Assembly (NCBI RefSeq): GCF_036321535.1
Contig: NC_087436.1
Span: 106,392,001-106,456,000 of the forward strand
Length of the DNA: 64,000 nt
From: Camelus dromedarius
Lineage: Eukaryota
Reading direction: 5' to 3'
The position numbers were made by a program, and so were the translations under genes. Within the stretch, counting starts at the first letter, position 1, and each line of letters begins with the position of its first letter. Of this stretch, positions 2,906 to 32,519 are shown piece after piece. The notes below the pieces were generated by a model that did no database searches, had not been told where the DNA came from, and worked only from the letters and a program-made list of their open reading frames with translations.

Positions 2906-3169
2906 AAGGATGCCATGCTGCCTGGTAGAAGGCACAGAGTGGGAGGAGGTGGCCTTGGTAGCCAAACTTAGTTCCTCTGGCTCCAAATTCCCTTCCCTTG
3001 TCACTACACAGTTGCATGTGCCTCTTATTTGATGCTTGTCATGGATTGTCAGCCTGCTATTTCCCCACCCCAACATGACCTCATAGTCTATGGGTATAAT
3101 TTATTTAGGGGACCCCATGATACATTTCTTCTGGAATTTAGTATTGCCAATAAAATCACTCTTGACTAC

Positions 3170-3430
3170 ATGACAACATTTATATACCTATAATCTACCA
3201 GGTGCTAGGCATTATTCTAGGAACTAAGATAAAATAGTGAACAAAGAACAAGACTCTTGTCCTCATGAACCTTACATTCTAGTGGAAGGGGACAGAAAAT
3301 ATGCAAAAGATACAAAATTTAGAATATTGATAAACACTGAAGAAAAAAGTAGAAGGAATAGAGATAGTCATGACTGGGAGTAGGGATGGGGTGATCATTG
3401 TTTTAGAGAGGTCAGGGAAGTCCCGTCTCC
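3170..3430 (-). mobile_element. L2 LINE 3' fragment
   Basis: CCAGGTGCTAGGCATTATTCTAGGAACTAAG...GTGAACAAAGAACAAGACTCTTGTCCTCATGAACCTTACATTCTAGTGG. Similar L2 3' ends occur near 212-330 and 1430-1560. Confidence 0.75.
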
Positions 3431-4974
3431 TTTTGTTGAATACTGAATATTTATTTAACCCAACACATTTTGATTTTTGTCCAAATAGCCAGGAAACTCA
3501 GAACTCAGCTACAAAAAATGCAGTGCATTCCAAGTACATACCTAGTGATTATTTCCTTGCTCCTTTTAACCTGATTTGATCTGGTTTTCATTTTTATTGT
3601 CTTGTATGTGTCTAACTTGGAAATAGATAAGATATACATCTTAAATATTCTTTGAAAAAATGAATGGGTTCAGTGAAAAGTACAAGAGAAATTAAATAGC
3701 CCATTTTCCTTTTGTTCAAAGGAACCTCCCCTTCTTTTTACCCATATTGACTGTTGAATAATCTCATCTCTGATTTGGCTGGGGACTCTTCCTTTTCTTG
3801 TACTGCTGTCTCCCCAGTGCTCACTATTCTCTCTCTCTCTCTTTCTTTTTCTTCCTTTCTGGCTCCGTCTCTATCTCTGTCTCCCCCTCTCTTTCCAAGA
3901 AAGTTTAGACTTCTGTTTCCTGGAAATTGGTGTTTTTCTTTTAAGATACAAAAACTTTAACTCTTTCCTTGCTGTAACCTTTTAAGTGACTGTGAATCTT
4001 TCTGGGACCATGGCGATACCTAGCAGGAGTCATGAATGTTGATGGATGTTGTAGTTTCCCCGTGTAATTAAAACTACAGTTATTTATAAGGCATTTAGAA
4101 ACTGTTGCAATACATAGTTGATGCTAATTGATGACAAATTCAAGCTACTTATCAATAATGCAAGATATTCATATCAACACCTTCTGTTTTGATGTTCAAA
4201 CATTTAACTTTGAGATCTCGAGAAATAGTATTTTATGTTAGTGTTAGTGTCTGGAAGGTAAGTGCAAACACTGGTGTTGACTGACATCCCAAGCCACTGT
4301 GTTAGGTCTGGGCCATGTTAACATGCAGTTAACATACAGTCTAGTCCTTAGTCACAGAAAGGAGAGGGCTTTGTTCTTAAATATTGTTTGGAAGGTCTAT
4401 CCATAATGCATGTTGTTAACAATATTTCTCTGTTTATTCTTCTTGCATGGAGTAGGACAAAACACTCTCAATGCATTTCTGTTGGTTATGTTCATAATCA
4501 TATTCTCCAGTTTGGGGGAAGTTTTGGAGATGGCATCCCTATGCTTATGATAAGGCCTTTGCAAGGCTGTTGGCATCATATATCCAATATTGTAGTCATT
4601 TGTGTATATGTTAGTTTCTTCCACTAAATTTAAGGGCAGAGATTGTGTGTTAATCAAGTTGGTGCCTAACAGTGTGCCTTCTAAGTAGTTGGCGGTCAAC
4701 AACTCTTTGAAGAGTAAACATGAGAATTTGTGCCAATATGATTGTCTTATAGGAAACAGTATGGAAAACACATGCCTGATTCCCTAGTGATATGAAGAGA
4801 ATCTGTAAGTAAAGTAAAAGCCTTAGAACATGTCTGAAACATAGTAAGCACTCTAATTTAATATTTAACTATTATTAACAATTTAACTATTATTTATTGT
4901 GCTATTTGAGTACTCCTAGGGCATAGAAGAATATTTGACACAGAGTTTACCTTAAAGATTCACTTAAGAAATGA

Positions 4975-5789
4975 ATGCATGTAATTATCAAAGAAATGCA
5001 AATCAAAACTACAATGAGGTACCATCTCATGCTGCTAAGAATGGCCCTCATTAAAAAGTCTACAAAAAATAAATGCTGGAGAGGGTGTGAAGAAATGGGA
5101 ACTCTCTTACACATTTGTTGGGAGTGTAATTTGCGTCAGCCACTATGGAAAATGGTATTGAGATTTCTTGAAAAGCTAAAAATAGAATTACCAAATGATC
5201 TAGCAGTCCCACTCTGGGTATATATTTGGAGAAAACTCTAATTTGAAAANNNNNNNNNNNNNNNNNNNNNNNNNNNNNNNNNNNNNNNNNNNNNNNNNNN
5301 NNNNNNNNNNNNNNNNNNNNNNNNNNNNNNNNNNNNNNNNNNNNNNNNNNNNNNNNNNNNNNNNNNNNNNNNNNNNNNNNNNNNNNNNNNNNNNNNNNNN
5401 NNNNNNNNNNCAACATAGATGGACCTAGAGATTATTATACTAAGTAAGTTAGACAAAGACAAATATTATATGATATCACTTATATGTAGAATCTAAAAAA
5501 ATGACACACATGAACTTATTTATGAAACAGAAATGGACTCAGAGATAGAAAAACTTATGGTTACCAAAGGGGAAGGAGGGGGAGGGATACATTAGGAATT
5601 TGGGATTAGTATATACAAACTACTATATATAAAATAGATAAACAACAAGGTCCTACTGTATAACACAGGGAACTATATTCAATAGCTTGTAATAATCTAT
5701 AATGAAAAAGAATATATATGTATAACTTAATCACAATGCTATTCACCAGAAACTAACACATTGTAAATCAACTATATATCAGTAAAAAC
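4975..5789 (+). mobile_element. 5'-truncated LINE-1 (ORF2 C-terminus plus 3'UTR), cetartiodactyl-type
   Basis: ORF 4975-5241 ([12 protein letters not shown]...[27 protein letters not shown]) matches the L1 ORF2 Cys-rich C-terminus. It is followed by a typical L1 3'UTR (GGTTACCAAAGGGGAAGG..., AACAACAAGGTCCTACTGTATAACACAGGGAAC) and interrupted by an N-run at 5250-5410. Confidence 0.92.
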
Positions 5790-12830: not shown

Positions 12831-14019
12831 TTGCTATTATTTTTATTCTAGCTCATAAAACTCTGAACTCTGAACATTAGGGAAGTAGAGAAAACCCTGT
12901 TCTTTGAAAGTTGAAGGGGAGGGGGGACCAGGAGTACCAGGCTCTTTCCTTTTCTCCAGACTTGTTTATTACTGCGGTAGGTTACCATGGAAACTTCCGG
13001 GATTAGGACGGTATTATTGGGTTAAGCATTCAATAAACACCTCAGGAGAGAAAAGCTATGACATGTATGCATACCGTAAGTAGTTTTCAAATGAGAGGGT
13101 TATTTGGGGGCAAGGAGGGGGTGGCAGTCACTGACTTTCTCATCTCGAGGAGTTTCCTGAGAGAATTATGATCGGGAGTTGAAACTGTGATCATCACCCT
13201 GCTCTGGCCCCTTGGAGGGCCATTCCCTAAAGTTGTCAGGAGTTACAGCCTGAATTTCGAACTGGGAGGCTGCTCTTTACGTCCCAGGGAGTGTGGCTTC
13301 CAAAATAGATTCCGAAGTGGAGAAGAACTCGGAGTGTTTTTTGAGAAGGGTTGACCTCCTTTCATGCCACTTACTGTGAATTAAAGCTGCGAGGGGAAGC
13401 TCGTTTGGGCTTGTGGTACAGCANNNNNNNNNNNNNNNNNNNNNNNNNNNNNNNNNNNNNNNNNNNNNNNNNNNNNNNNNNNNNNNNNNNNNNNNNNNNN
13501 NNNNNNNNNNNNNNNNNNNNNNNNNNNNNNNNNNNNNNNNNNNNNNNNNNNNNNNNNNNNNNNTTTTGTACCCAAGTTACAGGGTGCTCTTCTGCTAACA
13601 GTTCTTAAATGCAAAAGCAAATAGTTGTGGCCACAAAGGGCTTAATACATCTCAGCTGATTTTAGTTCTCAGACTCGAACTGGATGTGACTGGTATTGAC
13701 CTGCTCTGTGCATGTGATTTTCAGGTGGTCTGACTCTCCTCTGTCATTTTGTTGAGTTGTATTAGTCCCCGGGACAAAGGGTGACATATCCCAGCAGAGG
13801 TTAGGGCAGACACTTGACAACGAGAGGAGAAATACTGGTTCTACTAACAGGAGCAGCAGAACAGAGTCCTCGACCCGTGTCTTGAATGCCGGTTTCAGCC
13901 AGTTTGCAAATGTTTAATCAGTTATCAGCATGGAAGGATGCCCTGCATGAGTTCCTTGGATAAAGTATCATCACACGACAGAAATCACAGGGAGCGTGCA
14001 CCAAGGAAAAATTACAGTA

Positions 14020-14345
14020 CAGCTATATTTACTTAGTGCTGCTGCAGTGGGGTTTTATTTTCCACAGTTGGAAGGGGAACCACCTGTCTCACCCGCTGAT
14101 GTCAGAGAGCTCCCTCGAGACACAGGGCTGTTGGAAAGCACATGATACTGTATATATTTGCTCTTATGTCCATATCTGGCTAAGATTGGGTTTCAGATTT
14201 GTGCCCTATTGTGGAGTTCATTGAGCAGTGACTCCCAGGTGCCCTCCCACGTCATCATGCCCTTGTGAATTAAAAAGTAGCCCGTGTGAGCCCCTGTCCT
14301 GAGTGTTCCCTCAACCTGCCACGCACCTATTTTCACTGCAGTGAA
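14020..14345 (+). promoter_or_regulatory. PPARGC1A: PPARGC1A distal (alternative, exercise/cold-inducible) promoter
   Basis: Lies immediately upstream of exon 1b. Variant CRE CCACGTCA (14247-14254); E-boxes CAGGTG (14236-14241), CACCTG (14081-14086) and CAGTTG (14065-14070); TATA-like TTAAAAA (14270-14276); near-consensus MEF2 CTATATTTAC (14023-14032). CRE plus E-box control is established for this promoter in mouse and human. Confidence 0.7.
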
Positions 14346-14377
14346 ATGAATGGCACGCGTCTTGGGGGTTATCATTT

Positions 14378-14395
14378 ATGGATTCAGCTTTGCAA
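14378..14395 (+). CDS. PPARGC1A: Alternative exon 1b coding remnant MDSALQ (ortholog of ...MDSILK of PGC-1alpha-b/alpha4)
   Basis: ATG GAT TCA GCT TTG CAA followed by a strong GTGAGT donor (14396-14401); phase 0, in frame with exon 2. Upstream TTGGGGGTTATCATTT resembles the L-G-L-S-S codons of human/mouse exon 1b. Confidence 0.75.
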
Positions 14396-14411
14396 GTGAG
14401 TATGAAGAGGC

Positions 14412-14438
14412 ATGTTCTGTGCACCCAGTATCCTGCTG
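14412..14438 (+). CDS. PPARGC1A: Candidate exon 1c (1b') coding segment MFCAPSILL (ortholog of MLL of PGC-1alpha-c)
   Basis: ATG TTC TGT GCA CCC AGT ATC CTG CTG followed by GT (14439-14440), in frame with exon 2. ATC CTG CTG sits where ATG CTG CTG is expected. The donor (gtgttt) is weak. Confidence 0.45.
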
Positions 14439-16197
14439 GTGTTTTGGCTTTTAGTTTTCTTTCTAATTATCAAGATTTAAGGGAAAAAACTTTATCTACC
14501 GGATTTAGAGGTTTTATTTGCAGATTGTTAAAAGAGGCAAAAAAGGAATAGGATGTGCCTCTCCTTTTATTTTTATTTATTTATTAAACTTTATTTTTTG
14601 CTTGGTAGCATGTCAGTGTGGGAAAGTTGTTATAGAATGGATGAATGCCTAATGCCTAATTTGGAAAGGCTGAATAGGATGACCTTGCAATTTCAAGGGA
14701 CCTATTGCATGAGTATTATTATTTTTTAAGATGTTCAAAGAACTGTATAAACACTGTCTTTTGTACCTAGGAGAGAATTAGGCCTTTTAAAGGTAGTTCC
14801 TTAAGGCAATCTGAGGGCCGCTGCATTGCACAACGCCAGGGGGCACTGCTTTGGTCGTACTGAAGGATTCACACTTGTACTGTCTTGCTGACTATAGGCC
14901 CAATCCCAGGAAATATGGTGCTATTAGCATTGCTCAAACATTACATAAAAATAGAATTGTTACCGACAATTGCAGAAGGCATGCTATTAGTGAAGTTGTT
15001 CATTACTTTAATAGTGCCATGTATCTGAATTTGAATATCTTTACCAACTTGCAAATTATATGGTTGTTACACAAAATAGGTAGGAAACAGAGTTTCTAAG
15101 AGTGCAAATTACATTCTTGGGCCACATCAAATCAATGTCCTATTAGAGATCAGAACCAGGGTTCTTAATTCCCAGACTTCCCATGCTGCACACCTCCCAT
15201 TAAACTGATATTTTAAAGCATGCTTGGTATCTTTCTCTCAAATCCCAAAAATAGAGTAAATAGGATGGGTTAAGACCCCCTGGTTCATCTAATCTTTCCC
15301 CTCGTGTAAGATTTTCCTCTGAACCATTAAAAGCGTTATAATATATGATTGATATTAATTAGTTTTCTGGAAAGTATTGCACTCCTTAACATGAACTGAA
15401 CTAGAAATAAATATATTACCATGAATTAAAAATTTTATTAGTTGTGAAAAATTGGGTGAAGGCACCTATGTGAAATCCTAAGAGCAGGCGTCAAATTGAA
15501 TTAATGCCAGCACTGCCTTGAGATTAATCTGAGTACTGAATAAGAAATAGTATACCATAACATAACTGTGTTTACTGAATCATTTTTGGCATCAGAAACT
15601 AAAGCTACATTATAGATGCAACAACAGACTTTTCTCCCTTGGAAGAGAGAGGCGGGTGCATTTTGTAATTAAAGTGAATGTTACCCTCTGAAAAATGCTT
15701 CTGGTCTCCAGGAGGAAAACAGTCTTCTTGAGAACATTGCTTCCCTCGGACTTTGCATACTTTGTGCGGCCCTGGCCTTCTCCCACAGCCTAGTAGAGTT
15801 TTATATGATCAGCGCTATTTTCTACCCTCCCAATCTGGAGTCCTGGTTTGGGGGACTCACTTTCTAAATTTCCATCTCATTATTATGTATATGTTTTGAA
15901 AAGTTGTGGAAAGGTGTTGAAAAGATATATGGGATTGCCTCAGGGATGTTCTGTAAGGGATTCCTGATTCTACACGGTGGATGGTTTTACAGCATTTAAC
16001 ACAGGGCTGTGCGGGAAGAGGGTTAAAAATCCAAGGACCACTCTTGACTGGCTGGGATGGGAGTGATGCTCCCCAGAGCTGTGTGCTGCGGGGGCCCTGC
16101 TCTAATACCCCCTTTTATTCTGAAATTTCCTCATCTTGTCATTCATTCATTTTATTGGCATCTATGATATTACTTACTTGAGTGCAAAACTTCAGGC

Positions 16198-16492
16198 CAC
16201 CATTGTCAAACAGGAAGATTATACACATTGTATATGTAATTTTGAATTTTCTAGTCACTGCATTTGGACAAGGTAAATTTAATTCTAATAAAATATTTTT
16301 TCTAGTATGTCCAAAATATTATATCCATATGTCATCACTGTAAATTATTGATGAGGTATCTTCCATTCAATTGTTCATGCTTAAGACTTTGAGATCCTCT
16401 GTATATTTTGCATGGACAGCACACCACAGTTTTGACCGGACACATTTCAGATGCTCATACGTGAGTAGTGGCTGCTGCGTTGGACGCCACGG
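16198..16492 (+). mobile_element. MER33-like hAT-Charlie DNA transposon relic
   Basis: TATGTAATTTTGAATTTTCTAGT, GTCCAAAATATTAT and a CACATTTCAGATGCTCA...AGTGGCTGCTGCGTTGGAC terminus match the MER33 pattern. Confidence 0.75.
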
Positions 16493-17229
16493 TTGTCAAC
16501 TTATATGCCAACTTGGCAGGACATCCTTACACAGAAAAATTACTTGAAAGAAAAAAAACCCTTAAATATCTTAGACAAAATATCACATATCCTTTATATC
16601 ATGCTATCAATTTAAAAAGTGATTGTCTGATTGATCACAAATTCGAGAAGAGCGTAAATGCTGAGACGATTTAGTTGATGGGCCAGTGGTGGCAAAATTG
16701 ACTTGATGTTGGATTGTTTTGCTCCTGTGGCTTTCTTTTCCATTCTTGCCTCACAGATCTCATCATTTTAAAACACTATCTGCTACTTTGCAAATCTTCT
16801 CGAATTTGCGAACTCATGGGATCTTGTCAGTTTTCAGGCACCATATGGATGTCTTGTTTCTTAACAGAGAGACTCTTGAAAGACTTTTGGCTCAAATCAA
16901 TTCTGTGGCCAGCATCATGGAAACAAAAACTGTTTTCTGCACTTGCTGCTTCTGGTCTCTGTAGAGGCAGAGCCAGGTCAGGACTGGTATGAGGCTGGTT
17001 TTACTTTCCTTCAGGTACAGACACTTGGCAGACCGACAGCCTTGGTGATGATTCTGCGTGCACCCTCACAGAAAGTCAGCTTAATGTAAGACTTCAAAAG
17101 AAAGTCAGTTCTGCTATGTTTCTAGAACTTTTTTAGATGAGGAAGCCAGGTAAAGAGCAAACTTATTCATCTACTTTAATGGTGCTTGATGTTAAATGCC
17201 TTTTAAGTATCCATATGTGAATAACAGGT

Positions 17230-17430
17230 ATCCTTATGGAGTACTTCTTATACACCAAGCACCAGGCTCATATATATCTCATTTAACCCTAACACAAATC
17301 CTGCAAAAAAGGTGTTTTTATTGTCGTTTTCACAGATGAGAATGAAAGGTCAGATAGTTTAGGTAACTCACTCAGGATCACACAGATACCAAGTGGCAGA
17401 TCTGATCCCAAAGTTTATGTTCTCAGAGAA
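17230..17430 (-). mobile_element. MIR SINE
   Basis: TTTTCACAGATGAGAATGAAAGGTCAGATAGTTTAGGTAACTCACTCAGGATCACACAG. Confidence 0.75.
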
Positions 17431-17809
17431 TGAGACAATGTTTTCAAACCAAGTCAAAGACTCCCTTTCATAACGAATTTTAAACCCAGGGCAAAATACC
17501 ATGTTTTAGAGTTGGAAGTCTCCTTCGCTTCATTCACTGAAGAAATACATTCAGAGATGCCTAATCCTATCGCATCTTTTGATAGAAAGTAGGTCTAGAA
17601 AGTTGAAATGGCTTTGTCCAAGGTCAACAAACAAATCTACGCATCAGGTCCCTTGATTCCTACTCCTCTTCTGACTGTCTGTGTGGTTTAACTGGCTTCT
17701 TTCAGATGAATTGAACGTTCTGAATTTTTTTTTTTTAACTGAAAGGAAGCAAAATTTAAAACTTGGTAATGTAGGCACACTCTTTTCTCTTTGTCCTTTG
17801 TGCTCTTTA

Positions 17810-18230
17810 AACTTTCTATTGACATATACTGTGAACGCTGAGAAGTGCATGTATCATAAGGGTTTAGCTCCATGAACTTTCACTCACTAAACATGCCCAG
17901 GTAACCAGCACTGACAGCAGGAAATAAACCGTAACTAGCTTTCTGGAGCCCCTCCCCCACACCACGCTTCCAGCCTCCAACCACCACCAAAGGCAACCTC
18001 TATCCTGAGTTCCAGGCGCATAAATTAGGCATAGCTGTGTCTGTCATTGTTTATATAAAGACTAGAATAATCAGGTGTGCACTTTTTTGGTGTCTGGCTT
18101 CTTTTGCTTCACATTATGTTTGTGGGGTTTATCCAAATTTTGAGCTAATAGAAGTGTATTCATTCCCATTGGCGCCTTTGGCTATACTTTTGAAGTGTAT
18201 GAGAGCCTCAATGACTATCGTATTATGAGT
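17810..18230 (-). mobile_element. Ancient L1M 3'UTR fragment
   Basis: AAAGGCAACCTCTATCCTGAG...ATATAAAGACTAGAATAATCAGGTGTGCACTTTTTTGGTGTCTGGCTTCTTTTGCTTCACATTATG is antisense L1M 3' sequence. Confidence 0.65.
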
Positions 18231-21200
18231 GGAATTAATAAGTTTATCGAACATTAATTTGATTTAAGTTGCTCTTTTTAGAACGTTATAATCATAGTTT
18301 CCTTTGATTCAGTGTACAGCAAATAACAAAGCTCAAACATGGAGCTTAGCGGTTGCAATGCAAGGTACCTCCCAGCCAACCCCTCTTATCCTGTGTTTTT
18401 ACGCAATATTCAACATAGGGTAATATAATAGGGAAGACAAAGAGGGCACAGTCTGAAAATACCCGCGGGAGAGCGCCGAGCTGGAGTTCCCACTAAGTAG
18501 CTTTGTATGGCTGTGCAAAAGGTTAGGTGTGGCCTATTTTTAGGTACCCTACATGGAAATGGACGTCCTGAGATGGATGGTAGAAAGTTACAGCGCAGGA
18601 GTTGTCAGAGATTTTTGTTTTGAAAAGAGAGAGGAAAAGAATCCTTTCTGACCATCCGCTTGGGGCAAAGTACAATCTGGACTCTTTAGAGAAAAATAAA
18701 GTTTTTGGACTGTTGAAAAGGGAGACTCTTGTAAACTGCCTTTTGGAGATTGTTTCACAGGCCCAGAAATCAAGATTTCTTATGTTCGTTTCCTTATTGT
18801 TGCTTCTCTCTGGGAGCAGGACAATGGGAAGTTACATTTGTCATGGTAGAGGATACTGCATGAATGGCCAGCGTTGTCTGAGGATGGCTGGAGGTTTACA
18901 CAGGCTTTGTCCTGCCCGAGTCTATCATTTACCTGGTCTTACTTTGCTTACTCCGTGGTCACCAGGGATCCTTCTTCAAAATTTCTATTAGGGAAGTTAA
19001 TGTGCCTATGGCTATTAATTCAGCCCTAAAGGAAAATCTCTCCACGTTGACTTGGTTCATAGATTACTTGGTTCTGAAGCACAGATCTACCTCCTTCTAA
19101 ATCAGGTTGTATGTACAAAGGAAACAGCCAAATAGGAAAACGCGCTAACTCCCAATAATACATCAACTATACATCTTGTGATTCAGCGTTGGTTTCATAC
19201 AGTTGCTGATAATTCCAGGATGAAATATTTTAGGCATCTGACTTTCTTTTCTCTCTCCACACCCTACAGTAATATCTCAGATGATTCTTCTCAAATTAAA
19301 AAGAGGTAAGGTCTCCTTTTACCAAGTACAATGAACTTTTTATTTAAGGGAGGTGGGGAGATGCTCTGGTATTAGGGGGCAAAAGTGTTCCTTTAAGCTC
19401 TTATTTCCCTAGATACTCTAAGCCTTATTTCTTTTTACAGAACCTTAATTTTAGGATCCATCCTCTTTCCTAAATCTTCTCTCTCTGGGTTAACATCGTT
19501 TCATACCTGCTGTAAAACCAAATCACATATTAGTATGTTCAGTTGCTTCTATATGCAGGCATGAGTGAATAGTCACTATCAGACCAGCTTTGTGTTTTTC
19601 ATCCTTACTATGCAAGCAAGGACTTGATCTTCTACATGACTTGTACTACTTAATAGAATAAACGATAAACAAGATGAAAGCTTGCTATTTCTCTGGGGCA
19701 ATGAGCTGAGCTTTGTAAGAACCCTAGGTCTATAGAAGCCAGTCTTCTTACAGCCAACGTGCATCAAATGATTACATTTCCCAAGTTCTCTTGTGTTCTT
19801 TTTCTGAAATCGTTAGGAAGTTAAATATCCATCTTGCAAGGAAAGTGATGAAGCTATGGTCTTTCAGCAAAGCTGAGCACCGAACACCTTTCTTGCATGT
19901 CCTCCCTGGCTTCTAGTGGCTTTGTACAATGAAACATTTGGATTCACCCTGTGCAAAGAAGTCTTCTCAGGTTGCCTGTCTCTGTCAAGGAAGACACTTC
20001 ATTTCATTTGAGAGGTGGCAGGGATCTTAGATCTAATTGAATCCAGCCATCTCCGTTGACAGATAAGGAAACTGAGGCTTAAAATCATTAAGTGAATTGC
20101 CCAAAGTTGAACTGCAGGCCAATGACACAGCTGAGTGAGGACCCATGTCTTTCTTCCCATCCTTCCTCTTCCATTTTGGACTAAATCAAGATCCATAAAG
20201 TCACTCTACTTATTGGGAAGACTTGAGCCTCATGCAATCCCTTTAAAGCTCACAGACTTGGCCTTGCTTCCAGCCCCATGAACCCTCTTCTTACGAAAAT
20301 TCTTGATGGTCAAAATAATGTTCACTCAAGTGTATGAAGAGTGATTTGCAGGAAAGACTCATGAAACTGCGAGAAATTTTAACTCCAAGAGGCCAATAGC
20401 ACAGCTTTCATTCCTGTGGAGATAGTCAGCCTTCCTGGGGAGAGGGGGTGGTCCAGGCTCTGATGTGACATTTGGACAACCCAGAATGAGCTTCCTGCCT
20501 AAGAACAGGGCTGCAATGTGACAGCATTCACCCGGGTGGCTCCACATTTAGGAACAGACTGTATTCCAGAAGTTACCTTGCAAGTCACTGGTTTGCAACT
20601 TGGACTGCATTTTCCTCTTCCAGTCAGTTTCATTGTCTCCAGTCAAAGACACACCTCCAACAGCCCTTCCCTTCTTCCTTCCAGAACTGCCCCTTCCGAT
20701 TCCCCAGTCAGTAAAAATCCCTTCTTGAGAAACTTTCTTAATAGTTTCATCATACCATTCTGAAAGCATTTACTCATTTTTAAGTTTCTTGGTGTATGCT
20801 TCTGAACTCTGTTAGATGCTGGAAGGGTAAGAAAAAAAATATGATGAACAAGTAGATGCTTTTGGTATAAATAAACGAAGCCCCCTTAACCCTACCAAGG
20901 ATAACTGCATCTTTGAATAGAACGTTGGTTTAACTTAATTGGTGAAATTTCCAGTTGAGAAACAAAGTGAAGACAGTAGTGGCATCTGGGGGGGTCCATG
21001 GTTTGGGCCCACCTCTGAGGCAAGCTCGTAGTTGATAGCTTTCCTCTCCCTATAATTCAGGGCTGAGAGGATTCCTCAGTGCCAGGGAGTAACTTCTCCC
21101 AGCCTTGTATCCTGAGTGGAGTGGCTGTTAGACTCGATGTGATAGACAGAAATGGCTTCCTTTTAAATATATGATGAATATTGAGACTTATATGGGATGT

Positions 21201-21289
21201 CAGGGGCTATTTCTATTTGCTACGTTCCTTGTATGTTAAGAAGGCTCAGTCACAAGTCTGAATCTCTGTATTTCTGTAAAAAGTGAATA

Positions 21290-21930
21290 GTTTTTCTTCT
21301 TCTTCTGAATACAAAAGTTATACATGTTTATCACAGAAAATTTTAAAAAATTACAGACAGACACATATACTCACATACGTACCCAAATTAAAAGGAACAC
21401 AATGTCACTGGCCACTATTAACACCTGGTTATACTTTCTCCTTGTTCTTCTTCCTCGTCTTTCCTTCTGAGTGTATATATATATTTATAAGAAAATTTGT
21501 TGTGATTATAGTTTTTTCAACATAATTTTAAACCTTAATATATTTTGAACATTTTCTCATTATGCCATTAAATGTGTCTTACAACAGGTTTTTAATGATA
21601 GCATTGAATATACATACATAATGAATATATGTGTATGAATATATATGAGGTTTTATATATATAGTGCTCTATAATTTATTTAACTAGGCCATTATAGTTG
21701 AGCATTTACAACAGCTTTAAGTTTTTAATAAAGTAAATTATGTAGTATCGACTATCCTTATACCAAAAATCTTTGCACACACACCCCTGTTATTTCCTTA
21801 AGATGAACTTCTGGAAGTAGAATTTCTGGATCTACAGGGATGCCCAGTTTTAATTTTTGATACATACTGCCTGCTTGTCCTCTAGAAAAATTTTTACTCA
21901 CTTGTAATCCTACCAGTAGTATTTGACATC
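21290..21930 (-). mobile_element. Ancient L1ME fragment
   Basis: TTCCTTAAGATGAACTTCTGGAAGTAGAATTTCTGGATC...TTTTGATACATACTGCCTGCTTGTCCTCTAGAAA is an antisense L1ME motif; boundaries approximate. Confidence 0.6.
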
Positions 21931-24900
21931 TATTTTGGAGCTGCTAAATGTGGAGGTCAATCTTAGAAGTGGTCTTCTTGATTAAAAATATTTCCTCAAA
22001 AAGCCTGTGTCTAGTTGGGCTAGCAAATATAAAGTTAACTTTTATATAAGACATCACAAAATTTAGCTTAGACGTTAAGCTAATTTCTTCCTAAGATGAG
22101 AACTTACTTTCTTTCTACATCCCCTCATTTTTAGATATATATTAACTTTTCTAGAGTAAAATTCAAATACCTAAGCACTGGAAAAATCTGTTACAGAAAC
22201 AAAAGCAAAATAACCAAAATGCTTCCAAGTCTTATCTGGTGGGATTAAAAAAAAAAAAAAAAAGAAAGAAAGAAGGAGAAAAAGAAAAAAAATCACTTAT
22301 TTAACTCTTCCATTTTGAGAATTCTTGAAAATACAAGTTTGTTCTCTAAAATCAAAAAAACTTAAGCTTATTAGGACCCAAGTTCTAGAAGTACCAGGGA
22401 GAACTATTTTATCAACAATTTTTTTTTTAATTTAATAATTTGTGTACCCAGTTTTCTCTGACCCTCACCAACTTCATTAGGTGATAAAAATATCTTTCTT
22501 CTAAGTGAATTATTATGTTATTGAAGTTCAATAGCAGATTAAATTTGTATATACTACCAAATTTAATAAAATATGATGTGCTTTATTTTCAGTTTCAGTA
22601 AAAAAAAAATTGCTAAATAATCCTATTGTACATTTCTTGTTTAAATAATCAGTAACTCACTGCATTATAGATGAATTAACCTGAAATAATAAAGGAAATG
22701 AAAATGTCTGTAGATATACAACTACAGCAGAGTTAAGCACCAGACAAAATCAGGTTTTAACCATCCTTTTATTATCTTTTATCTGTGGGCCTAATAAGCA
22801 TTCTTCTTGTTTTATGTTTAGATGGGTCCAATTGACTGCAATTAGGATTAATTTTCATATTATTTTTTCTGTTTTAATGTGAAAAATGCCAACAGCAGCT
22901 TTTGAGGTCCGTGGTAAAATAAAGGCTGACTCAGTTGCATAGAGCTGGTCTACAGAAGGTTTTATGGGAGATGAGAGATGTGTTGCTTAAGACATCACTG
23001 CTTGCTTATTTTTAAAAAGTAAAAATAAAATAAATAAATGAATGTTAGGAGGCACTAAAGCTGTCTACTAATTTTCTTCAATTTTTTTCCCAAAGGTGCT
23101 TTGTGCACAATGACATGACCATGGCTGTTTTGTAAAATAAGACTTCATTTTAGAGTGTTTATAAGCCAGAGGCCTTTGTTATACCCTGCCCTGCTACCAA
23201 CTTTTGTGCCCTGCACAGTCACAGCTTCAAACATGTCCTGGAGGCTCAGAGCATGTGCTCAGACCCTGACATGGGGTATCAGGATCAATTAGCCCCTCTA
23301 GGAATTAAAAGCAAGCAATTGAATGCCTGTTAGCAATGATTAACTTTAAAAATATTAGCCATTCTGGGCAGATCCTTTTCCTTTCTAGGCAGGCAGCATT
23401 CCCAGGAATGTTGGTTTCCAGTTTAGTAGACAAGTCTCTTGGTTATAAAGTTGCCTGGGGGTACTTTGCTGTGCTTTTGATTTGGAAATGAATATTATTC
23501 TTATGTATGAAACTTCAGTTCTCCCTAGAAGGGTTTGCAGACATCTCTTCCCTGTATGCTCTTTTCAGCTGCTATCTAAATCCTTGCTCTGCCTTATTTT
23601 TCTCTGTTATAAAGTAGGGACACAGGTAATCTTTACTGGGTAGTTTTTAGGACTAAATTATTTAAAATGTAGTATGTAAAATGCTAATCTCAGTGTCTGG
23701 CCCGTGTAAGTCTGCTGTCTGTTTTCTTCTCCATTTTTCTCTCTTGAGAAGTTTCAGCCTTAAATATATTCGCATGTAGCTTATTGAAAGCTTATGAAAA
23801 CAAATGAGCAAAGATATTTATACTAGTCGCTCTTTACTTCTGAGTTCTCACCTATATACAAGAATGAGGCCAAAACCAATTCTCTCTGCTGTTGTCTACT
23901 TGGGTATTTGAGTTTGATTGTGTTTATTTTTTAGAAGTGGCCATTGTCTGAAATATGGATAGTGGGAAAAGCCTGTGATCTGGGGCAGGAGTAGGGAAGG
24001 AAACCCAGAAGTTAGGGACTTTGTCAATTTTTTTTTAATAGAATTGAATTATTCTCTTGAAGGTTTATTTTCTCCCCTGTTATCAGCTTTAAGGATAGAC
24101 TCTCTTGTCTCCACCAATGCTGGAGTCTTGGGAAACGTTAACAGAACTACTGAGGGAAGAAATTCCACTGGGGTGGAATCTAGGCCCTGTGTAGATATGG
24201 AACATTATGGACACTCCACAGATGTTAATAAATACCTTCTTCTATTGTTAGGACAAAATGGGGTTGACTTGGGTGTGAATTTAATGGTTAGTGAAAGGAC
24301 CTTTTACCTAGAAAGGGTGTGTTTTAAAGAGCACAGGAATCTGGATATTGAGCAAATTAGCCTTGTTTATTTTATATCAAATTTTTCTCCGTTTTTAAGG
24401 TCTGTCATCTCCCCAAATTGTAAGCCTCCTTGTGTCCATGACATATGCCTCCTTGGCAGTCCTTGCAGTACGTTACTGGGGACACAGTAAGGTTTCAATA
24501 GATCCTTGTCAATTGAAACAAAACATTTGGAACTCCTGGAAGCAGAGTTGACGAAGGGGTCAAAAGAGGGCTGCAGGGAGGAAGGAAGAGGAACAGTCAA
24601 GGCAGAGTGGGTATTAAGTGTGGAAACCTCCTGGGAAGCCGGAGAAGACCGAGGTTGGTGAGCAACAAACAATTTAAGTTCTCCTGAGAGAAGAAAACTG
24701 GACAGAAGAGAAATTTTAATCTGAAGAGCTAACTAACCAAGTTATAAGACCTCTAAAATATCCCTCTCTTTAGAGTTGTAATTTTGAGATTAAAAAAAAA
24801 AAAGTGGAATCTACTCTAATTTGTCCCAATAATCTATTTATATTTTTATTTGAACAGTAATAGAAACTTGAGGGGAAATTTGCAGTATGCTGTAGTTTAT

Positions 24901-24965
24901 AAATCATTTCAATGTTTTGACCCCTAACTAACCCTCTTTGTAATGGTAAGGAAAAAAAAGCAAGC

Positions 24966-24988
24966 ATATATATATATATATATATATA
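24966..24988. repeat. (AT)n microsatellite
   Basis: Read directly from the sequence. Confidence 0.95.
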
Positions 24989-25164
24989 AGAAAAACACCT
25001 CTGGTTTCAATGGATGTACTGATTTGATCAAGAAAAAGTGAAATGAGGTGGTAAAAAGACAAACAGGAAAACCCCAACAACATAAGATGAGTGGGTTAAG
25101 GTATCAAAAACAATAATGCAAAATGTTCCAGTGTAAAGAACATCTCTAAAAGATGTGAATAGGA

Positions 25165-25186
25165 TGTGTGTGTGTGTGTGTGTGTG
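25165..25186. repeat. (TG)11 microsatellite
   Basis: Read directly from the sequence. Confidence 0.95.
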
Positions 25187-26239
25187 TATATGTATATAAT
25201 GAATACCTAGCATTCAATGAACACAAAAGTATCAGAGAATAACACGACCCAGGGATCACCTGATAATAAACATCAAGTCTCCTTGGTCAAGTGACCAATA
25301 TTATTTCACAGTTGACTGTGTGGAGGGTTGAGCCAATGACCTTTGCCCTGAATTTAATAATTTACTGTAGTTTTACATTAAATCAGAATATAATTGGGAA
25401 GAAAATTAGTGTTTCTTTGTGGGGAGTGCAGAGTAATGCCGCTAATTGCATGTATAAAAGCCTTCCCGAGGTTGTATTTTCCTGTTCTTTCTTGATTTAG
25501 AAAATTAAACTACGGTAATTTTCCGCTATTTGTAAGAGGGAAAATGTACCAGTGAAATGTATTCAGCTAACTTAAAATGTCAAAGCTTTTGGCCACCTTT
25601 TTATGTCCAGTAATGACAAACTGTCAATTTCATCACATTATTCAGGAATATACTAGCAACTTGTTGCAGATATCAGAGTAGACAAATCTAAGATATGTGT
25701 GGTCTGAAAGAGGAAACAGTCTGGTGTTTTTTGGTTTTTCTGTTTGTTTTTCTTTCTTTCACTTTAATATTTGAGCAACTTTATAGTTAGAGCAAATCAC
25801 TATTTTTTTCCTTTTAAAGAGATGGACAATAGAGAATTCATTAACTTAACTTTAGTGGAAGAGGAGATTAAATTAATAGTGCTTTAGAATTACTTTTTGA
25901 TACCTGGGGAATTTTTTTTTCAGATAATTTATAATCAGGTAAAAGAATAGAGCTGATATCCAAAGTGTAGTGGGTAAAAATTTTATAAAAACATGTATAT
26001 TCACAAATATACATACATGCGTACATCACTCTGGATCTTGGAAGGGTTAAATCAGACCACGGTGGTGTAATGGGAAGTGTCTTTCGGCGTTGTCTAGTAC
26101 CTTGAGTTTGTTATGTATTCAATACGTAGTGTCATCATAAAACAGTTGTGCCTGCATTAGCCCTCATTGTCTCAGGCTACAAGCTGAAAAATTTTAAAAA
26201 TGAAAAAGCTCAAGAAATGAATATTTCTGCTAATGGCAT

Positions 26240-27136
26240 GTCGGTATTTTTCCCTTACTCCACGGACATTCTTGGTCTCAAACGCAAACTGTACAACCCA
26301 GGGCACTAGGGTTGGAATCCAGTGTTTATTCAAAAAGGCACCCTAAGGCAGTTAGAGGAAATGCTACATGTATGGGGGGGCGGAAAAAAAGGCAGCCGGG
26401 AAACTACGCTGATCTAGGCAGAGCAGCACTGACTGTATTTGCTAACACTTGTTCTCTGAGAGCCTATGAGAGAAATGGAAATAATCAGAAGGAACCTTAA
26501 AGGATGGGATTTTCTTGCTTGTTCTCCTTATATGGAGCACAGCAAACTGCAGTAAGACTTCGGGAGCTGGTATTCCCTACTGCCACGGGCACAGCCGATT
26601 TCTGGGTGGAGGAGTTTGTTTAGACCGTAACAAATATGGGCTGTTTTGTTGATTAAATAAGCAAAGCAAAAAGAAAAGAAAGAAAAAAGTATGCCCCCTT
26701 CTCTGCTTTCAAACACTTCCCCCAATTAGAAAATATCTCATAAAAATGCATCATGTGATAAGATCCTGCTTTAGTCCCAAACCGAGTCCATTTGGATGTC
26801 TTAGAATTTGAGTCCTTAGGGAGTACACATTTTAGCTGNNNNNNNNNNNNNNNNNNNNNNNNNNNNNNNNNNNNNNNNNNNNNNNNNNNNNNNNNNNNNN
26901 NNNNNNNNNNNNNNNNNNNNNNNNNNNNNNNNNNNNNNNNNNNNNNNNNNNNNNNNNNNNNNNNNNNNNNTCAAAGCTGGCTTTAGTCACAGCATGATGC
27001 TCGAAGCCTCCAAAAGTCCAAGTGTTTCCTTTCTTTCTTTCCTCTTTCTGTTTTTTTTTTTCTTTTTTTTTTTAAGCGTTACTTCACTGAGGCAGAGGTC
27101 TGCCTTTGAGTGACGTCACGAGCTTCAGCAGCAGGC
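26240..27136 (+). promoter_or_regulatory. PPARGC1A: PPARGC1A proximal promoter
   Basis: Contains TGCCTTTGAGTGACGTCA. Insulin-response (FOXO1)-type heptamers TATTTTT (26245-26251) and TGTTTTG (26642-26648) lie at spacings similar to the human promoter. A long pyrimidine/T tract spans 27025-27073. Confidence 0.85.
27111..27118. promoter_or_regulatory. Palindromic CRE (TGACGTCA), CREB/ATF2 site
   Basis: Perfect TGACGTCA in the conserved TGCCTTTGAG-TGACGTCA context known from the PPARGC1A promoter. Confidence 0.92.
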
Positions 27137-27406
27137 NNNNNNNNNNNNNNNNNNNNNNNNNNNNNNNNNNNNNNNNNNNNNNNNNNNNNNNNNNNNNNNN
27201 NNNNNNNNNNNNNNNNNNNNNNNNNNNNNNNNNNNNNNNNNNNNNNNNNNNNNNNNNNNNNNNNNNNNNNNNNNNNNNNNNNNNNNNNNNNNNNNNNNNN
27301 NNNNNNNNNNNNNNNNNNNNNNNNNNNNNNNNNNNNNNNNNNNNNNNNNNNNNNNNNNNNNNNNNNNNNNNNNNNNNNNNNNNNNNNNNNNNNNNNNNNN
27401 NNNNNN
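27137..27406 (+). other. PPARGC1A: Inferred position of canonical exon 1a (5'UTR plus first coding segment), hidden by a 270-nt N-run
   Basis: The run starts 18 nt after the promoter CRE, and its length fits the CRE-to-first-donor distance in mammalian PPARGC1A. It leaves a ~5-kb intron 1. The sequence itself is not visible, so this is inference. Confidence 0.8.
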
Positions 27407-28009
27407 CAGCCAGGACCGAAGCTTCCCTCGCGATGCAATTATTCCTGTAAGGGGGGAAGGGCTTGGGCTTGGGCGAGGAGAGGAGAGGAGGCAGAAAAGT
27501 AGCCCGGGCAGCAGCTTTTGGAAGGGAATCTCTATCTTATCTCAACTCCAATAAGTTTGCTATTTTAAGGTGGCTCTGAGATACCTTGAGCAAATCAAAG
27601 CTTAGCTGCTGTCATCAGTATCTGTTGCAGTTAGAAACTCTTTCCATGTGCCTTTGGCTCTGTTTCTACCCATATGCAATATTTATGCTCCAAGATATTG
27701 ATATGAATCAGAGGCTAAAGTCTTTCCAGTGGTGTTTAGTGGCCTGGTTGGAAAAATGCCATTTCTATTTATAATAAGATAAAGATAAAAATATTAAAAT
27801 GGATGTGCTCAGATANNNNNNNNNNNNNNNNNNNNNNNNNNNNNNNNNNNNNNNNNNNNNNNNNNNNNNNNNNNNNNNNNNNNNNNNNNNNNNNNNNNNN
27901 NNNNNNNNNNNNNNNNNNNNNNNNNNNNNNNNNNNNNNNNNNNNNNNNNNNNCTGATTCCTTTAAAACTCCTGTATGTGGTTGAAAGCTTTGGCCGGCAG
28001 ATAAAAAAA

Positions 28010-28029
28010 ATATATATATATATATATAT
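28010..28029. repeat. (AT)10 microsatellite in intron 1
   Basis: Read directly from the sequence; preceded by A8. Confidence 0.95.
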
Positions 28030-31000: not shown

Positions 31001-32339
31001 ATTTTATTCAAAATCTAAATGTCAAGCAGCGTCTTCAGCTTCAGGCCCCACTGCTGCCTGGATGTGAACAAGTTCCCAGCAGCAATCCCGACCTTGGAAG
31101 GGAGGGCCGAGAGGGCATCACCTCAGAGTGTGCACCTGCTGATTTAGACCCCTCAGCTCGCAGGTGGACGAAGTCCCTGGGGCTCTGGCATCATCAGACC
31201 CCTGCAATCGGAAGTTTCCGCAGGGTTCTTCACAGTTTGCAGTGATGAATCAGCAGTCAGATAGCTGGTCTGAGGTTAGAAATCTACCTCATTGGGAAGG
31301 GGGTCCACTTTCCTTAAAAAAGCCACAGTATGAAACACTTAAAAGACCACCTACTCTAGGCAAGAAGGTGACAAGCAGTCCAGTCACCATCAAGGATATT
31401 TTAAGCCTCTCAAATATATTGAAATCATTTTTAAAACTCCAAAGGGGAAAAAAAATAGTTTTTGTGAATTCACTTAGAGCACAGTTGAGGCATATATAAA
31501 TGATGAACAAAAAACGTAGTTGTGGTGTGCCCTACTGGTTTTTCTTTTCAGACGTCAGATGATGCCAATCATTTACATACATACATACACACACCCACAC
31601 ACCAACACACAAGACTTGCAAGTTACACATAGTGAAAAATACAAAGGGCATAAAAAAAAGATTTTTGTTCTTCCTCTCAAGGATCTTGCTTTTGACCTGT
31701 TTGAAATGAAGTTCAGAGGCTCATGAAAAAAGATTTAAATAACAATTCAACAGAACCATAGACAAGTTAAAGGACTTTGCATCATTAGTTGCTAAATGAA
31801 TTACACGGATTATAATGGTTAAAGGGAGAATGAATGGAGAAAGTTTTCCTGGTATAGTTCTTATATCCTATTTTTCATTTAGTAATCATTTATTTTGTCT
31901 TTATTATGTGTGATGACAATTCCAAGGTGAAATCAAATTTGTATCCGTCTCTCAAAGGAGTTATACTCTGAGGATAGAGTGAAATTTTGCATTTGTTAAT
32001 CAAAAAATAATTTGAAACTTGGTAAAGTGTTAACTATCAAAGAGGTGCAAGCAAATCTAGTTGATTTCTAACCGGGTGAATCCGAGAAGGCTTCATGGAA
32101 CCGTAACATTGACCAGGGATTTAGAGGTAGAATTTTGGATGGAGTGGTTCGGGCAAAGTACCCTTTGGGAGCAAAGTGAGTTAAAGAATTTAGGGTGTTT
32201 TTCTGGTGACTAAAACCCTGGAAACCAGCTTTGGTGGTGTCGTTGAATTAACCAGGCTTAATTCCTATCACATGCTATTGCAGTTTAATAAATTCCTGCA
32301 GTTAACGAAAGCCTTTTTCCCCCCTCCTACCTCCTGCAG

Positions 32340-32519
32340 TGTGCTGCTCTGGTTGGTGAAGACCAGCCTCTTTGCCCAGATCTTCCTGAACTTGACCTTT
32401 CTGAACTAGACGTGAACGACTTGGATACAGACAGCTTTCTGGGTGGACTCAAGTGGTGCAGTGACCAATCAGAAATCATATCCAATCAGTACAACAATGA
32501 GCCTTCGAACATATTTGAG
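32340..32519 (+). CDS. PPARGC1A: PGC-1alpha coding exon 2 (180 nt, phase 0/0)
   Basis: Polypyrimidine tract and ...ctcctgcag|TGT acceptor; TTTGAG|gtaagg donor. The 60 codons read CAALVGEDQPLCPDLPELDLSELDVNDLDTDSFLGGLKWCSDQSEIISNQYNNEPSNIFE, matching PGC-1alpha exon 2. Candidate branch point TTAAC at 32302-32306. Confidence 0.98.

What the first reader, a model, noticed from the sequence alone, without database searches (positions are those of the whole stretch)
14346..14401. Exon 1b start-codon turnover, with a single extra G knocking the replacement ATG out of frame
Established: human/mouse exon 1b encodes MLGLSSMDSILK (PGC-1alpha-b, alpha4). Seen here: ...AATGGCACGCGTCTTGGGGGTTATCATTTATGGATTCAGCTTTGCAA|gtgagt. 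The position of the canonical ATG reads GTC (14359-14361), and another ATG sits at 14350-14352. With four Gs in the run at 14364-14368, this ATG would read MARVLGLSFMDSALQ, in frame with exon 2 and collinear with MLGLSSMDSILK. The sequence has five Gs, so the ATG is shifted and, after splicing, ends as a short uORF (MARVLGVIIYGFSFAMCCSGW*). Only the internal ATG at 14378 (weak -3 T) gives an in-frame product, MDSALQ-CAALVG. Inference: either a homopolymer error hides a lineage-specific extended N-terminus, or the +1 G is a real allele or fixed change that shortens and dampens the exercise/cold-inducible PGC-1alpha isoforms. Either would matter for muscle and thermogenic metabolism in this lineage.
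Basis: partly seen in the sequence, partly recalled or inferred. Interest (0 to 1): 0.82.

Follow-up and report, generated by a model that had tools for sequence, protein, structure and literature searches.

The report
PGC-1alpha exon 1b lacks first ATG
In this probable camelid, the exercise- and cold-inducible first exon of the PGC-1alpha gene really does lack the start codon used in mouse, so the protein most likely begins six residues later at a conserved internal methionine; this is a small and probably old difference, not a recent frameshift or a sequencing error.

Summary
Window 14300-14395 is the ortholog of PPARGC1A alternative exon 1b. It lies 12.7 kb upstream of the proximal promoter and 18 kb upstream of exon 2 (32340-32519). 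It reads GTC where mouse has the MLGLSS start, has a run of five Gs at 14364-14368, and its only ATG in frame with exon 2 is at 14378 (MDSALQ|CAALVGED).

- **Assembly error is very unlikely.** Two contigs assembled from separate sequencing runs match the window 100% and both show five Gs.
- **The "replacement ATG disabled by an extra G" story is not supported.**
Out-of-frame upstream ATGs are therefore an older feature of this exon.
  - A polar bear transcript fragment reads IASAGLTYYEQQ before exon 2. It aligns with the window's in-frame HASWGLSFMDSALQ (p about 0.01). This hints that the same phase and the missing first ATG predate camelids.

The most likely outcome is initiation at the internal Met by leaky scanning, giving a 6-residue rather than 12-residue leader.

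No DNA from other species could be retrieved, so how many lineages share this state remains open. Interest is low.

The parts
14249..14277 (+). Candidate core of the alternative (distal) promoter: CRE-like ACGTCA at 14249-14254 and TATA-like TTAAAAAG at 14270-14277
   Evidence: Read directly from the sequence. The motifs sit 25-50 nt before the start site inferred from the human model. CREB dependence of this promoter is described in PMC5727290. This is a motif match only; function was not tested.
14300..14395 (+). Alternative exon 1b. The 5' end is approximate; the splice donor is CAA|GTGAGT at 14395|14396
   Evidence: The human exon 1b primer starts at nt 77 of XM_005248132.1 (PMC7560925), which puts the 5' end of that model 96 nt before the donor. 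Primer alignments are; peptide match to mouse P0134 is.
14346..14348 (+). First upstream ATG (context G at -3). Opens a 39-codon frame that overlaps the main start and ends at TAG 32407-32409 in exon 2
   Evidence: It aligns with the first ATG of the mouse exon 1b primer CCACCAGAATGAGTGACATGGA.
14350..14352 (+). Second upstream ATG (T at -3, G at +4). Opens a 21-codon frame that ends at TGA 32357-32359.
   Evidence: Mouse has GTG at the aligned position.
14359..14361 (+). GTC at the position of the mouse MLGLSS start codon
   Evidence: Alignment of V-L-G(+1)-L-S-F-M-D-S-A-L-Q with mouse MLGLSSMDSILK. The last base (A) of the mouse primer falls on 14359.
14364..14368 (+). G5 run, one base longer than a mouse-like frame requires
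   Evidence: The same G5 is present in Logan contigs L001 and L007.
14378..14395 (+). Conserved internal ATG and the six codons MDSALQ, in phase 0 with exon 2. This is the predicted start of the exon 1b isoforms in this species
   Evidence: Human CTATGGATTCAATTTTGAAA|TG and mouse CATGGATTCAATTTTGAAA|TG align at 15-16 of 18-19 bases.
14396..14438 (+). Exon 1b' extension, ending at the second donor CTG|GTGTTT. The mouse MLL start (ATG) reads ATC at 14430-14432
   Evidence: The mouse primer CTATGCTGCTG|TGTGCTG aligns to TATCCTGCTG. Human and mouse 1b' primers align across 14391-14413.
32340..32519 (+). Exon 2 (60 codons, CAALVGED...NIFE), with acceptor ...CTCCTGCAG|TGT
   Evidence: It is 100% identical to many mammalian PGC-1alpha proteins.

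Best explanation
This is a real sequence state of the PPARGC1A alternative exon 1b, apparently homozygous in the two sequencing runs examined. The ATG that starts MLGLSSMDSILK in mouse is absent. The exon 1b isoforms (the counterparts of PGC-1alpha-b and PGC-1alpha4) are predicted to start at the conserved internal methionine, ATG 14378, the equivalent of Met7. This gives the leader MDSALQ in front of exon 2.

Ribosomes would reach that ATG by leaky scanning past two out-of-frame upstream ATGs at 14346 and 14350. Both of their frames run over the main start and end in exon 2. An ATG-laden leader is not new to this lineage, because mouse exon 1b transcripts also carry upstream ATGs, one at the same position as 14346.

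The extra base and the missing first ATG are probably older than camelids. ATG 14350 is best read as one more upstream ATG, not as a disabled replacement start.

**Shown:** the sequence, the reading frames, the orthology, and G5 in read-derived contigs.
**Inferred:** the transcription start near 14300, splicing of 14395 to 32340, use of ATG 14378, and the age of the change.
For: - **Sequence and frames:**
- **Orthology:** mouse isoform 2 (P0134, AFZ74947.1) starts MLGLSSMDSILK|CAALVGE. Its peptide matches the window's in-frame peptide with p about 0.0006. Human and mouse primers from PMC7560925, PMC4632948 and PMC4106048, and the Miura-type primers found in 5 papers, align across the exon, its donor and the 1b' extension.
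- **Position:** the exon lies 12.7 kb upstream of the CRE-bearing proximal promoter at about 27.1 kb. The literature gives about 13.7 kb (PMC4106048).
- **G5 is real:** L001 and L007, from two different runs, match 100% over 3.0 kb and 2.1 kb.
- **Upstream ATG is shared:** the ATG of the mouse primer aligns on 14346.
- **No other in-frame start:** TGA at 14342-14344 closes the frame, and no near-cognate codon lies before 14378.
- **Older origin:** polar bear P0138 reads IASAGLTYYEQQ|exon 2, against HASWGLSFMDSALQ in the window, p about 0.01.
Against: - No transcript, ribosome or protein data for this species could be reached, so start-site use and splicing are inferred.
- ATG 14378 has a weak context (T at -3) and lies behind two upstream ATGs whose frames overlap it, so output could be very low.
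- The polar bear evidence is a single 12-residue stretch from an automatic Ensembl model. It needs a two-codon gap and is only moderately significant.
- The two Logan runs have neighbouring accession numbers and may come from the same animal as the assembly, so they say little about the population.
- The middle of the mouse exon, between the primer and the MLGLSS codons, was not seen as DNA.
Confidence: 0.6

Rival explanations
1. One reading: the fifth G is a homopolymer error in the assembly. The true sequence has four Gs, giving a lineage-specific extended N-terminus MARVLGLSFMDSALQ that starts at ATG 14350.
For: With one G removed, the frame from 14350 is open into exon 2 and collinear with MLGLSSMDSILK.
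Against: Two contigs assembled independently from raw reads of two runs carry G5, match the window 100%, and run through the site without a break. ATG 14346 would still precede 14350 and stay out of frame.
Confidence: 0.03
2. One reading: after the canonical ATG was lost, ATG 14350 took over as the start in this lineage. A later, real +1 G insertion then knocked it out of frame, shortening and dampening the inducible isoforms.
For: The sequence is compatible with this order of events. Mouse has GTG, not ATG, at the aligned position of 14350, so that ATG is at least not shared with mouse.
Against: - No sequence with ATG 14350 and four Gs was found anywhere.
- The polar bear fragment reads A-S-x-G-L in the same phase as the G5 state, which suggests the extra base is old.
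- Upstream out-of-frame ATGs are already normal in the mouse leader.
- This story needs three ordered events where one old difference would do.
Confidence: 0.12
3. Coding decay: in this lineage the alternative promoter's transcripts no longer make a defined N-terminal variant. Both mouse-type starts are gone (1b ATG to GTC, 1b' ATG to ATC), and the mRNAs are poorly translated, non-productive or mainly regulatory.
For: Both canonical starts are absent. Two overlapping upstream frames precede a weak-context ATG. The polar bear fragment also lacks the internal Met, which suggests relaxed constraint on this peptide among laurasiatherians.
Against: - Both splice donors are intact and close to human and mouse.
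- The internal ATG and its frame into exon 2 are kept.
- The promoter-like CRE and TATA motifs are present.
- An in-frame ATG also exists for 1b' at 14412.
Confidence: 0.2

Closest known systems
Mouse and human PPARGC1A alternative exon 1b (PGC-1alpha-b, PGC-1alpha2, PGC-1alpha4 / NT-PGC-1alpha-b)
   Same: Same place in the gene, same GTGAGT donor, same phase-0 junction to exon 2, and the same internal Met-Asp-Ser...Leu. It also has the same second donor for 1b', and an upstream ATG at the position of the first ATG in the mouse primer.
   Different: The first ATG (MLGLSS) is GTC. There is one extra base in the G run. Three of the last six residues differ (MDSALQ against MDSILK). The predicted leader is 6 residues rather than 12.
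Exon 1b' (PGC-1alpha-c / PGC-1alpha3, N-terminus MLL)
   Same: It is the same exon extended to a second donor 43 nt downstream, with sequence alignable to the human and mouse 1b' primers.
   Different: The MLL ATG reads ATC here. An in-frame ATG at 14412 would give MFCAPSILL. This is the subject of a separate first-stage note, s1-179972.
Polar bear PPARGC1A transcript fragment A0A452T8P3 (P0138)
   Same: Its N-terminal stretch before exon 2 aligns with the window's in-frame exon 1b peptide (A-S-x-G-L), in the same phase and with no first Met.
   Different: The internal Met is Tyr and the stretch is two residues shorter. It is an automatic model with an incomplete 5' end, and its DNA was not seen.
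Conserved uORF in the canonical (exon 1a) PGC-1alpha 5' leader (Dumesic et al. 2019, Cell Metabolism; cited from my own knowledge, not checked here)
   Same: Upstream ATGs in a PGC-1alpha leader are expected to limit translation of the main frame.
   Different: That uORF lies in a different exon and a different leader. Here the upstream frames overlap the main start and end in exon 2, so reinitiation is excluded and only leaky scanning can work. No functional data exist for this leader.

Membership tests
PPARGC1A alternative exon 1b | Lies about 13-14 kb upstream of exon 1a and the proximal promoter, on the same strand and upstream of exon 2 | tested here: met
   The donor is at 14395. The proximal promoter CRE (tgacgtcac) is near 27110, followed by a masked run at 27137-27406 that probably holds exon 1a. 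Exon 2 is at 32340. The literature distance is about 13.7 kb.
PPARGC1A alternative exon 1b | Sequence similarity to human and mouse exon 1b, including the donor | tested here: met
   Primer alignments give 15-16 of 18-19 bases (exon 1b) and 19 of 22 bases (human 1b' primer across the donor). The peptide match has p about 0.0006.
PPARGC1A alternative exon 1b | Phase-0 donor joining in frame to exon 2 (…K/Q|CAALVGED) | tested here: met
   MDSALQ|CAALVGED... stays open through all 60 codons of exon 2. The donor is CAA|GTGAGT and the acceptor follows a polypyrimidine tract and CAG. Splicing itself was not observed.
PPARGC1A alternative exon 1b | Start codon at the MLGLSS position | tested here: not met
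   14359-14361 reads GTC, and in the actual frame the codons are GCG TCT.
PPARGC1A alternative exon 1b | Internal Met (Met7 of MLGLSSMDSILK) | tested here: met
   ATG 14378, followed by GAT TCA as in human and mouse.
PPARGC1A alternative exon 1b | Second downstream donor giving exon 1b' | tested here: met
   CTG|GTGTTT at 14438|14439, aligned with the mouse CTATGCTGCTG|TG junction primer.
PPARGC1A alternative exon 1b | CREB-responsive promoter, inducible by exercise, cold or beta-adrenergic signalling | not testable with these tools
   Only motif-level hints are available: ACGTCA at 14249-14254 and TTAAAAAG at 14270-14277. No expression data could be reached.
Upstream-ORF control of translation | Upstream ATGs lie inside the transcribed leader | tested here: inconclusive
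   ATGs 14346 and 14350 lie 46-50 nt downstream of the start site inferred from the human model offset and the TATA-like box. The start site in this species is unknown.
Upstream-ORF control of translation | Upstream frames end before or overlap the main start; conserved in relatives | tested here: met
   Both upstream frames overlap ATG 14378 and end in exon 2, at 32357-32359 and 32407-32409. The first ATG is shared with mouse.

The most novel reading that the evidence does not exclude
The MLGLSS start may be a feature of rodents and primates only. Across Laurasiatheria (carnivores and even-toed ungulates, at least) exon 1b would then carry the one-base-longer phase without a first ATG, and the internal Met has had different fates: kept in this camelid, Tyr in polar bear. 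In large groups of mammals the exercise- and cold-inducible promoter would make PGC-1alpha with a different, shortened or absent 1b-specific N-terminus. That would imply the promoter's value lies in when the gene is transcribed, not in the alternative peptide.
Probability: 0.35. Interest if true: 0.4.

Novelty: new variant of a known kind. Interest (0 to 1): 0.2.

Why it matters
PGC-1alpha-b and PGC-1alpha4 account for most of the exercise-induced rise in PGC-1alpha mRNA in human and mouse muscle (PMC5727290). Their 12-residue leader is usually treated as a fixed feature. This species shows that the leader is not conserved: the first ATG is missing and only the internal Met remains. If that holds more widely, isoform-specific reagents, primers and annotations built on the mouse sequence will not transfer to livestock or wild mammals, and functional claims tied to the 1b peptide deserve caution. 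For camelid physiology, the predicted effect is small: six fewer N-terminal residues on a leader that already had upstream ATGs in mouse. Nothing here shows a metabolic consequence.

Tried and rejected
- **Orthologous exon 1b DNA from other species.** The pattern GGATTCANNTTTGNAAGTGAGTA matches human, mouse and this window. It found nothing in metagenome contigs and only two chance hits in prokaryote genomes and viral contigs, with no similarity to the window.
- **Protein searches.** The exon 2 search and the all-library search returned many first-exon variants, but none of 1b type among the short hits.
  - A muntjac "GLSSFHSLK" N-terminus looked like exon 1b, but it lies within 900 bp of exon 2, so it is not exon 1b (my guess is that it is SINE-derived).
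  - A search with the 60-residue minus-strand ORF across exon 1b found no homologues.
  - A search with mouse isoform 3 followed by a cluster listing gave mouse isoform 2 and the polar bear fragments. No camelid isoform turned up.
- **Locus look-ups.** The dolphin and muntjac loci stop short of exon 1b, at 10 kb or less upstream. Mouse P0133 and bear P0138 are not on record with DNA. Three further window ORFs gave no extra contigs.
- **Literature.** No held paper prints the peptide MLGLSSMDSILK or DNA beyond the primers. Ruas 2012 and Chinsomboon 2009 are not held. No paper on exon 1b in livestock or camels was found.
- **Non-AUG initiation upstream in frame.** Rejected, because no near-cognate codon lies between the TGA at 14342 and ATG 14378.
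- **Bear P0117 N-terminus LSLSCRDFL.** It does not match exon 1b.

Full report
**What is there**

The window holds the 5' end of a mammalian PPARGC1A gene. Other first-stage notes on this genome call it a camelid; I did not test that.

- Exon 2 is at 32340-32519. Its 60 codons, CAALVGED...NIFE, are 100% identical to many mammalian PGC-1alpha proteins.
- The proximal promoter, with its CRE tgacgtcac, sits near 27110. A masked N run at 27137-27406 follows and probably covers exon 1a. I left all N runs untouched.
- The finding lies 12.7 kb upstream of that promoter. The literature gives about 13.7 kb for the alternative promoter and exon 1b (PMC4106048).

**Checking the observation**

The quoted letters are correct.
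- GTC is at 14359-14361 and GGGGG at 14364-14368.
- ATG 14350 reads MARVLGVIIYGFSFA. After the 14395|32340 junction it continues MCCSGW and stops at 32357-32359.
- ATG 14378 reads MDSALQ and then runs through exon 2 in frame.

It is the first ATG in the exon and has the best context (G at -3). It opens a third frame of 39 codons that ends at TAG 32407-32409.

Upstream of 14378 the productive frame is closed by TGA at 14342-14344, and no near-cognate start codon lies in between.

**Is it exon 1b?** Yes.

- Mouse isoform 2 (P0134, AFZ74947.1) begins MLGLSSMDSILK|CAALVGE. Against the window's in-frame peptide NEWHASWGLSFMDSALQ, it scores better than against all but 0.06% of 3496 GT-preceding peptides in the window.
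- Published primers give DNA anchors, aligned:
  - human exon 1b, CTATGGATTCAATTTTGAAA|TGTGC (PMC7560925, PMC4632948);
  - mouse, CATGGATTCAATTTTGAAA|TG (PMC4106048);
  - human 1b', TGAAAGTGAGTATCAGGAGGCA, 19 of 22 bases across the donor;
  - mouse 1b', AAGTGAGTAACCGGAGGCATTC;
  - the mouse 1b' junction, CTATGCTGCTG|TGTGCTG, which meets TATCCTGCTG|GT at 14429-14438.
- Both donors (CAA|GTGAGT and CTG|GTGTTT) and the exon 2 acceptor look sound.
- The human primer starts at nt 77 of the XM model. That puts the model's 5' end 96 nt before the donor, at about 14300 here.
- This fits a TATA-like TTAAAAAG at 14270-14277 and a CRE-like ACGTCA at 14249-14254. All three ATGs would therefore lie inside the transcript, but that is an inference.

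**Is the fifth G real?**

Two Logan contigs assembled from raw reads match the window 100%: SRR36380802 over 3.0 kb (L001) and SRR36380800 over 2.1 kb (L007). Both run straight through the site with five Gs. A polishing or homopolymer error in the assembly is therefore very unlikely.

The two runs have neighbouring accession numbers. They may come from the same animal as the assembly, so they say little about polymorphism.

**Is 14350 a disabled replacement start?** I found no support for this, and two observations count against it.

1. The widely used mouse exon 1b primer CCACCAGAATGAGTGACATGGA (5 papers) aligns at 14334-14355. Its first ATG falls on ATG 14346, and extending the alignment without gaps puts its last base, A, on 14359, the first base of the expected canonical ATG.
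   - Mouse exon 1b mRNAs therefore carry at least two ATGs ahead of the annotated MLGLSS start. Those ATGs must be out of frame, or closed by a stop, for the annotated 12-residue leader to hold.
   - So a leader with out-of-frame upstream ATGs is the older condition, not a product of the extra G.
   - At the position of 14350, mouse reads GTG.
2. A polar bear Ensembl fragment (P0138, A0A452T8P3) has IASAGLTYYEQQ directly before exon 2.
   - It aligns with the window's in-frame HASWGLSFMDSALQ. The A-S-x-G-L match is upstream of, and in the same phase as, the G run. The score is reached by only 1% of control peptides.
   - If this is the bear exon 1b, then a carnivore shares both the longer phase and the lack of a first ATG, and it has also lost the internal Met.
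   - This is one short stretch from an automatic model, so I treat it as suggestive only.

**Most likely mechanism**

Transcripts from the alternative promoter splice 14395 to 32340. Ribosomes that scan past ATG 14346 and ATG 14350 start at ATG 14378. The resulting PGC-1alpha-b and PGC-1alpha4 counterparts have a 6-residue leader rather than 12.

Both upstream frames overlap the main start, so reinitiation cannot help and only leaky scanning can. Translation may be inefficient, but by the primer evidence the mouse leader has the same handicap. A lineage-specific "dampening" is therefore not shown.

The mouse literature reports that PGC-1alpha-b and PGC-1alpha-c coactivate about as well as PGC-1alpha-a despite their different N-termini (PMC4106048). 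Losing six residues is therefore unlikely to change coactivator function much; that is an inference.

**Rivals**

- Assembly error: about 3%.
- A real recent frameshift of a once-used replacement start: about 12%.
- Coding decay of the alternative first exon: about 20%. It is notable that the 1b' MLL start is also gone here (ATG to ATC) and that bear lacks the internal Met.

**Limits**

I could not obtain exon 1b DNA from any other species.
- Pattern scans of the three contig collections gave nothing usable.
- Locus look-ups stop 10 kb from an annotated gene, or fail above 100 kb.
- The protein searches are capped.

No expression or translation data were available.

**Verdict**

The more dramatic reading, a replacement start knocked out by one G with metabolic consequences, is not supported. 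The plain reading is an old, tolerated difference in a poorly constrained leader, with initiation at the conserved internal Met. Interest is low.

Noticed in passing
window 14396-14438: In the exon 1b' extension, the mouse MLL start (CTATGCTGCTG|) reads TATCCTGCTG| here, so that ATG is also lost. ATG 14412 is in frame with the 14438 donor and would give MFCAPSILL. ATGs 14378 and 14402 are out of frame for that donor. A separate first-stage note (s1-179972) covers this.
   Followed up: partly
window 28963-29061: Matches the N-terminal exon of felid PGC-1alpha isoform X5/X6 (MEDFFSSLEFLESFSS...; P0171) at 52% identity (E 1e-5), but with three stop codons in this species. It lies between exon 1a and exon 2.
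   Followed up: no
window 30792-31114: Two database N-termini map here, 1.2-1.5 kb upstream of exon 2. P0056 matches 30792-30971 (E 8e-14, one stop). The dolphin 'PGC-1alpha-like' protein P0007 matches 31019-31114 (62% identity, open, and starts with Met here). This may relate to the 'exon 1c' promoter downstream of exon 1a described in PMC9338484.
   Followed up: no
window 13424-13563, 26839-26970, 27137-27406, 27816-27952, 29196-29327, 40660-40871, 5250-5410: There are seven N runs of 132-270 bases. The run at 27137-27406 directly follows the proximal promoter CRE and probably hides exon 1a (no MAWDMC-type peptide is readable anywhere in the window).
   Followed up: no
L002/L003 (Muntiacus, gene at 3001-3894): A muntjac 'hypothetical protein' (P0004) joins a first exon within 900 bp of exon 2 (...VAKSQTGLSSFHSLK; my guess is that it is SINE-derived) to exon 2. 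Its GLSS..SLK ending mimics exon 1b by chance.
   Followed up: partly
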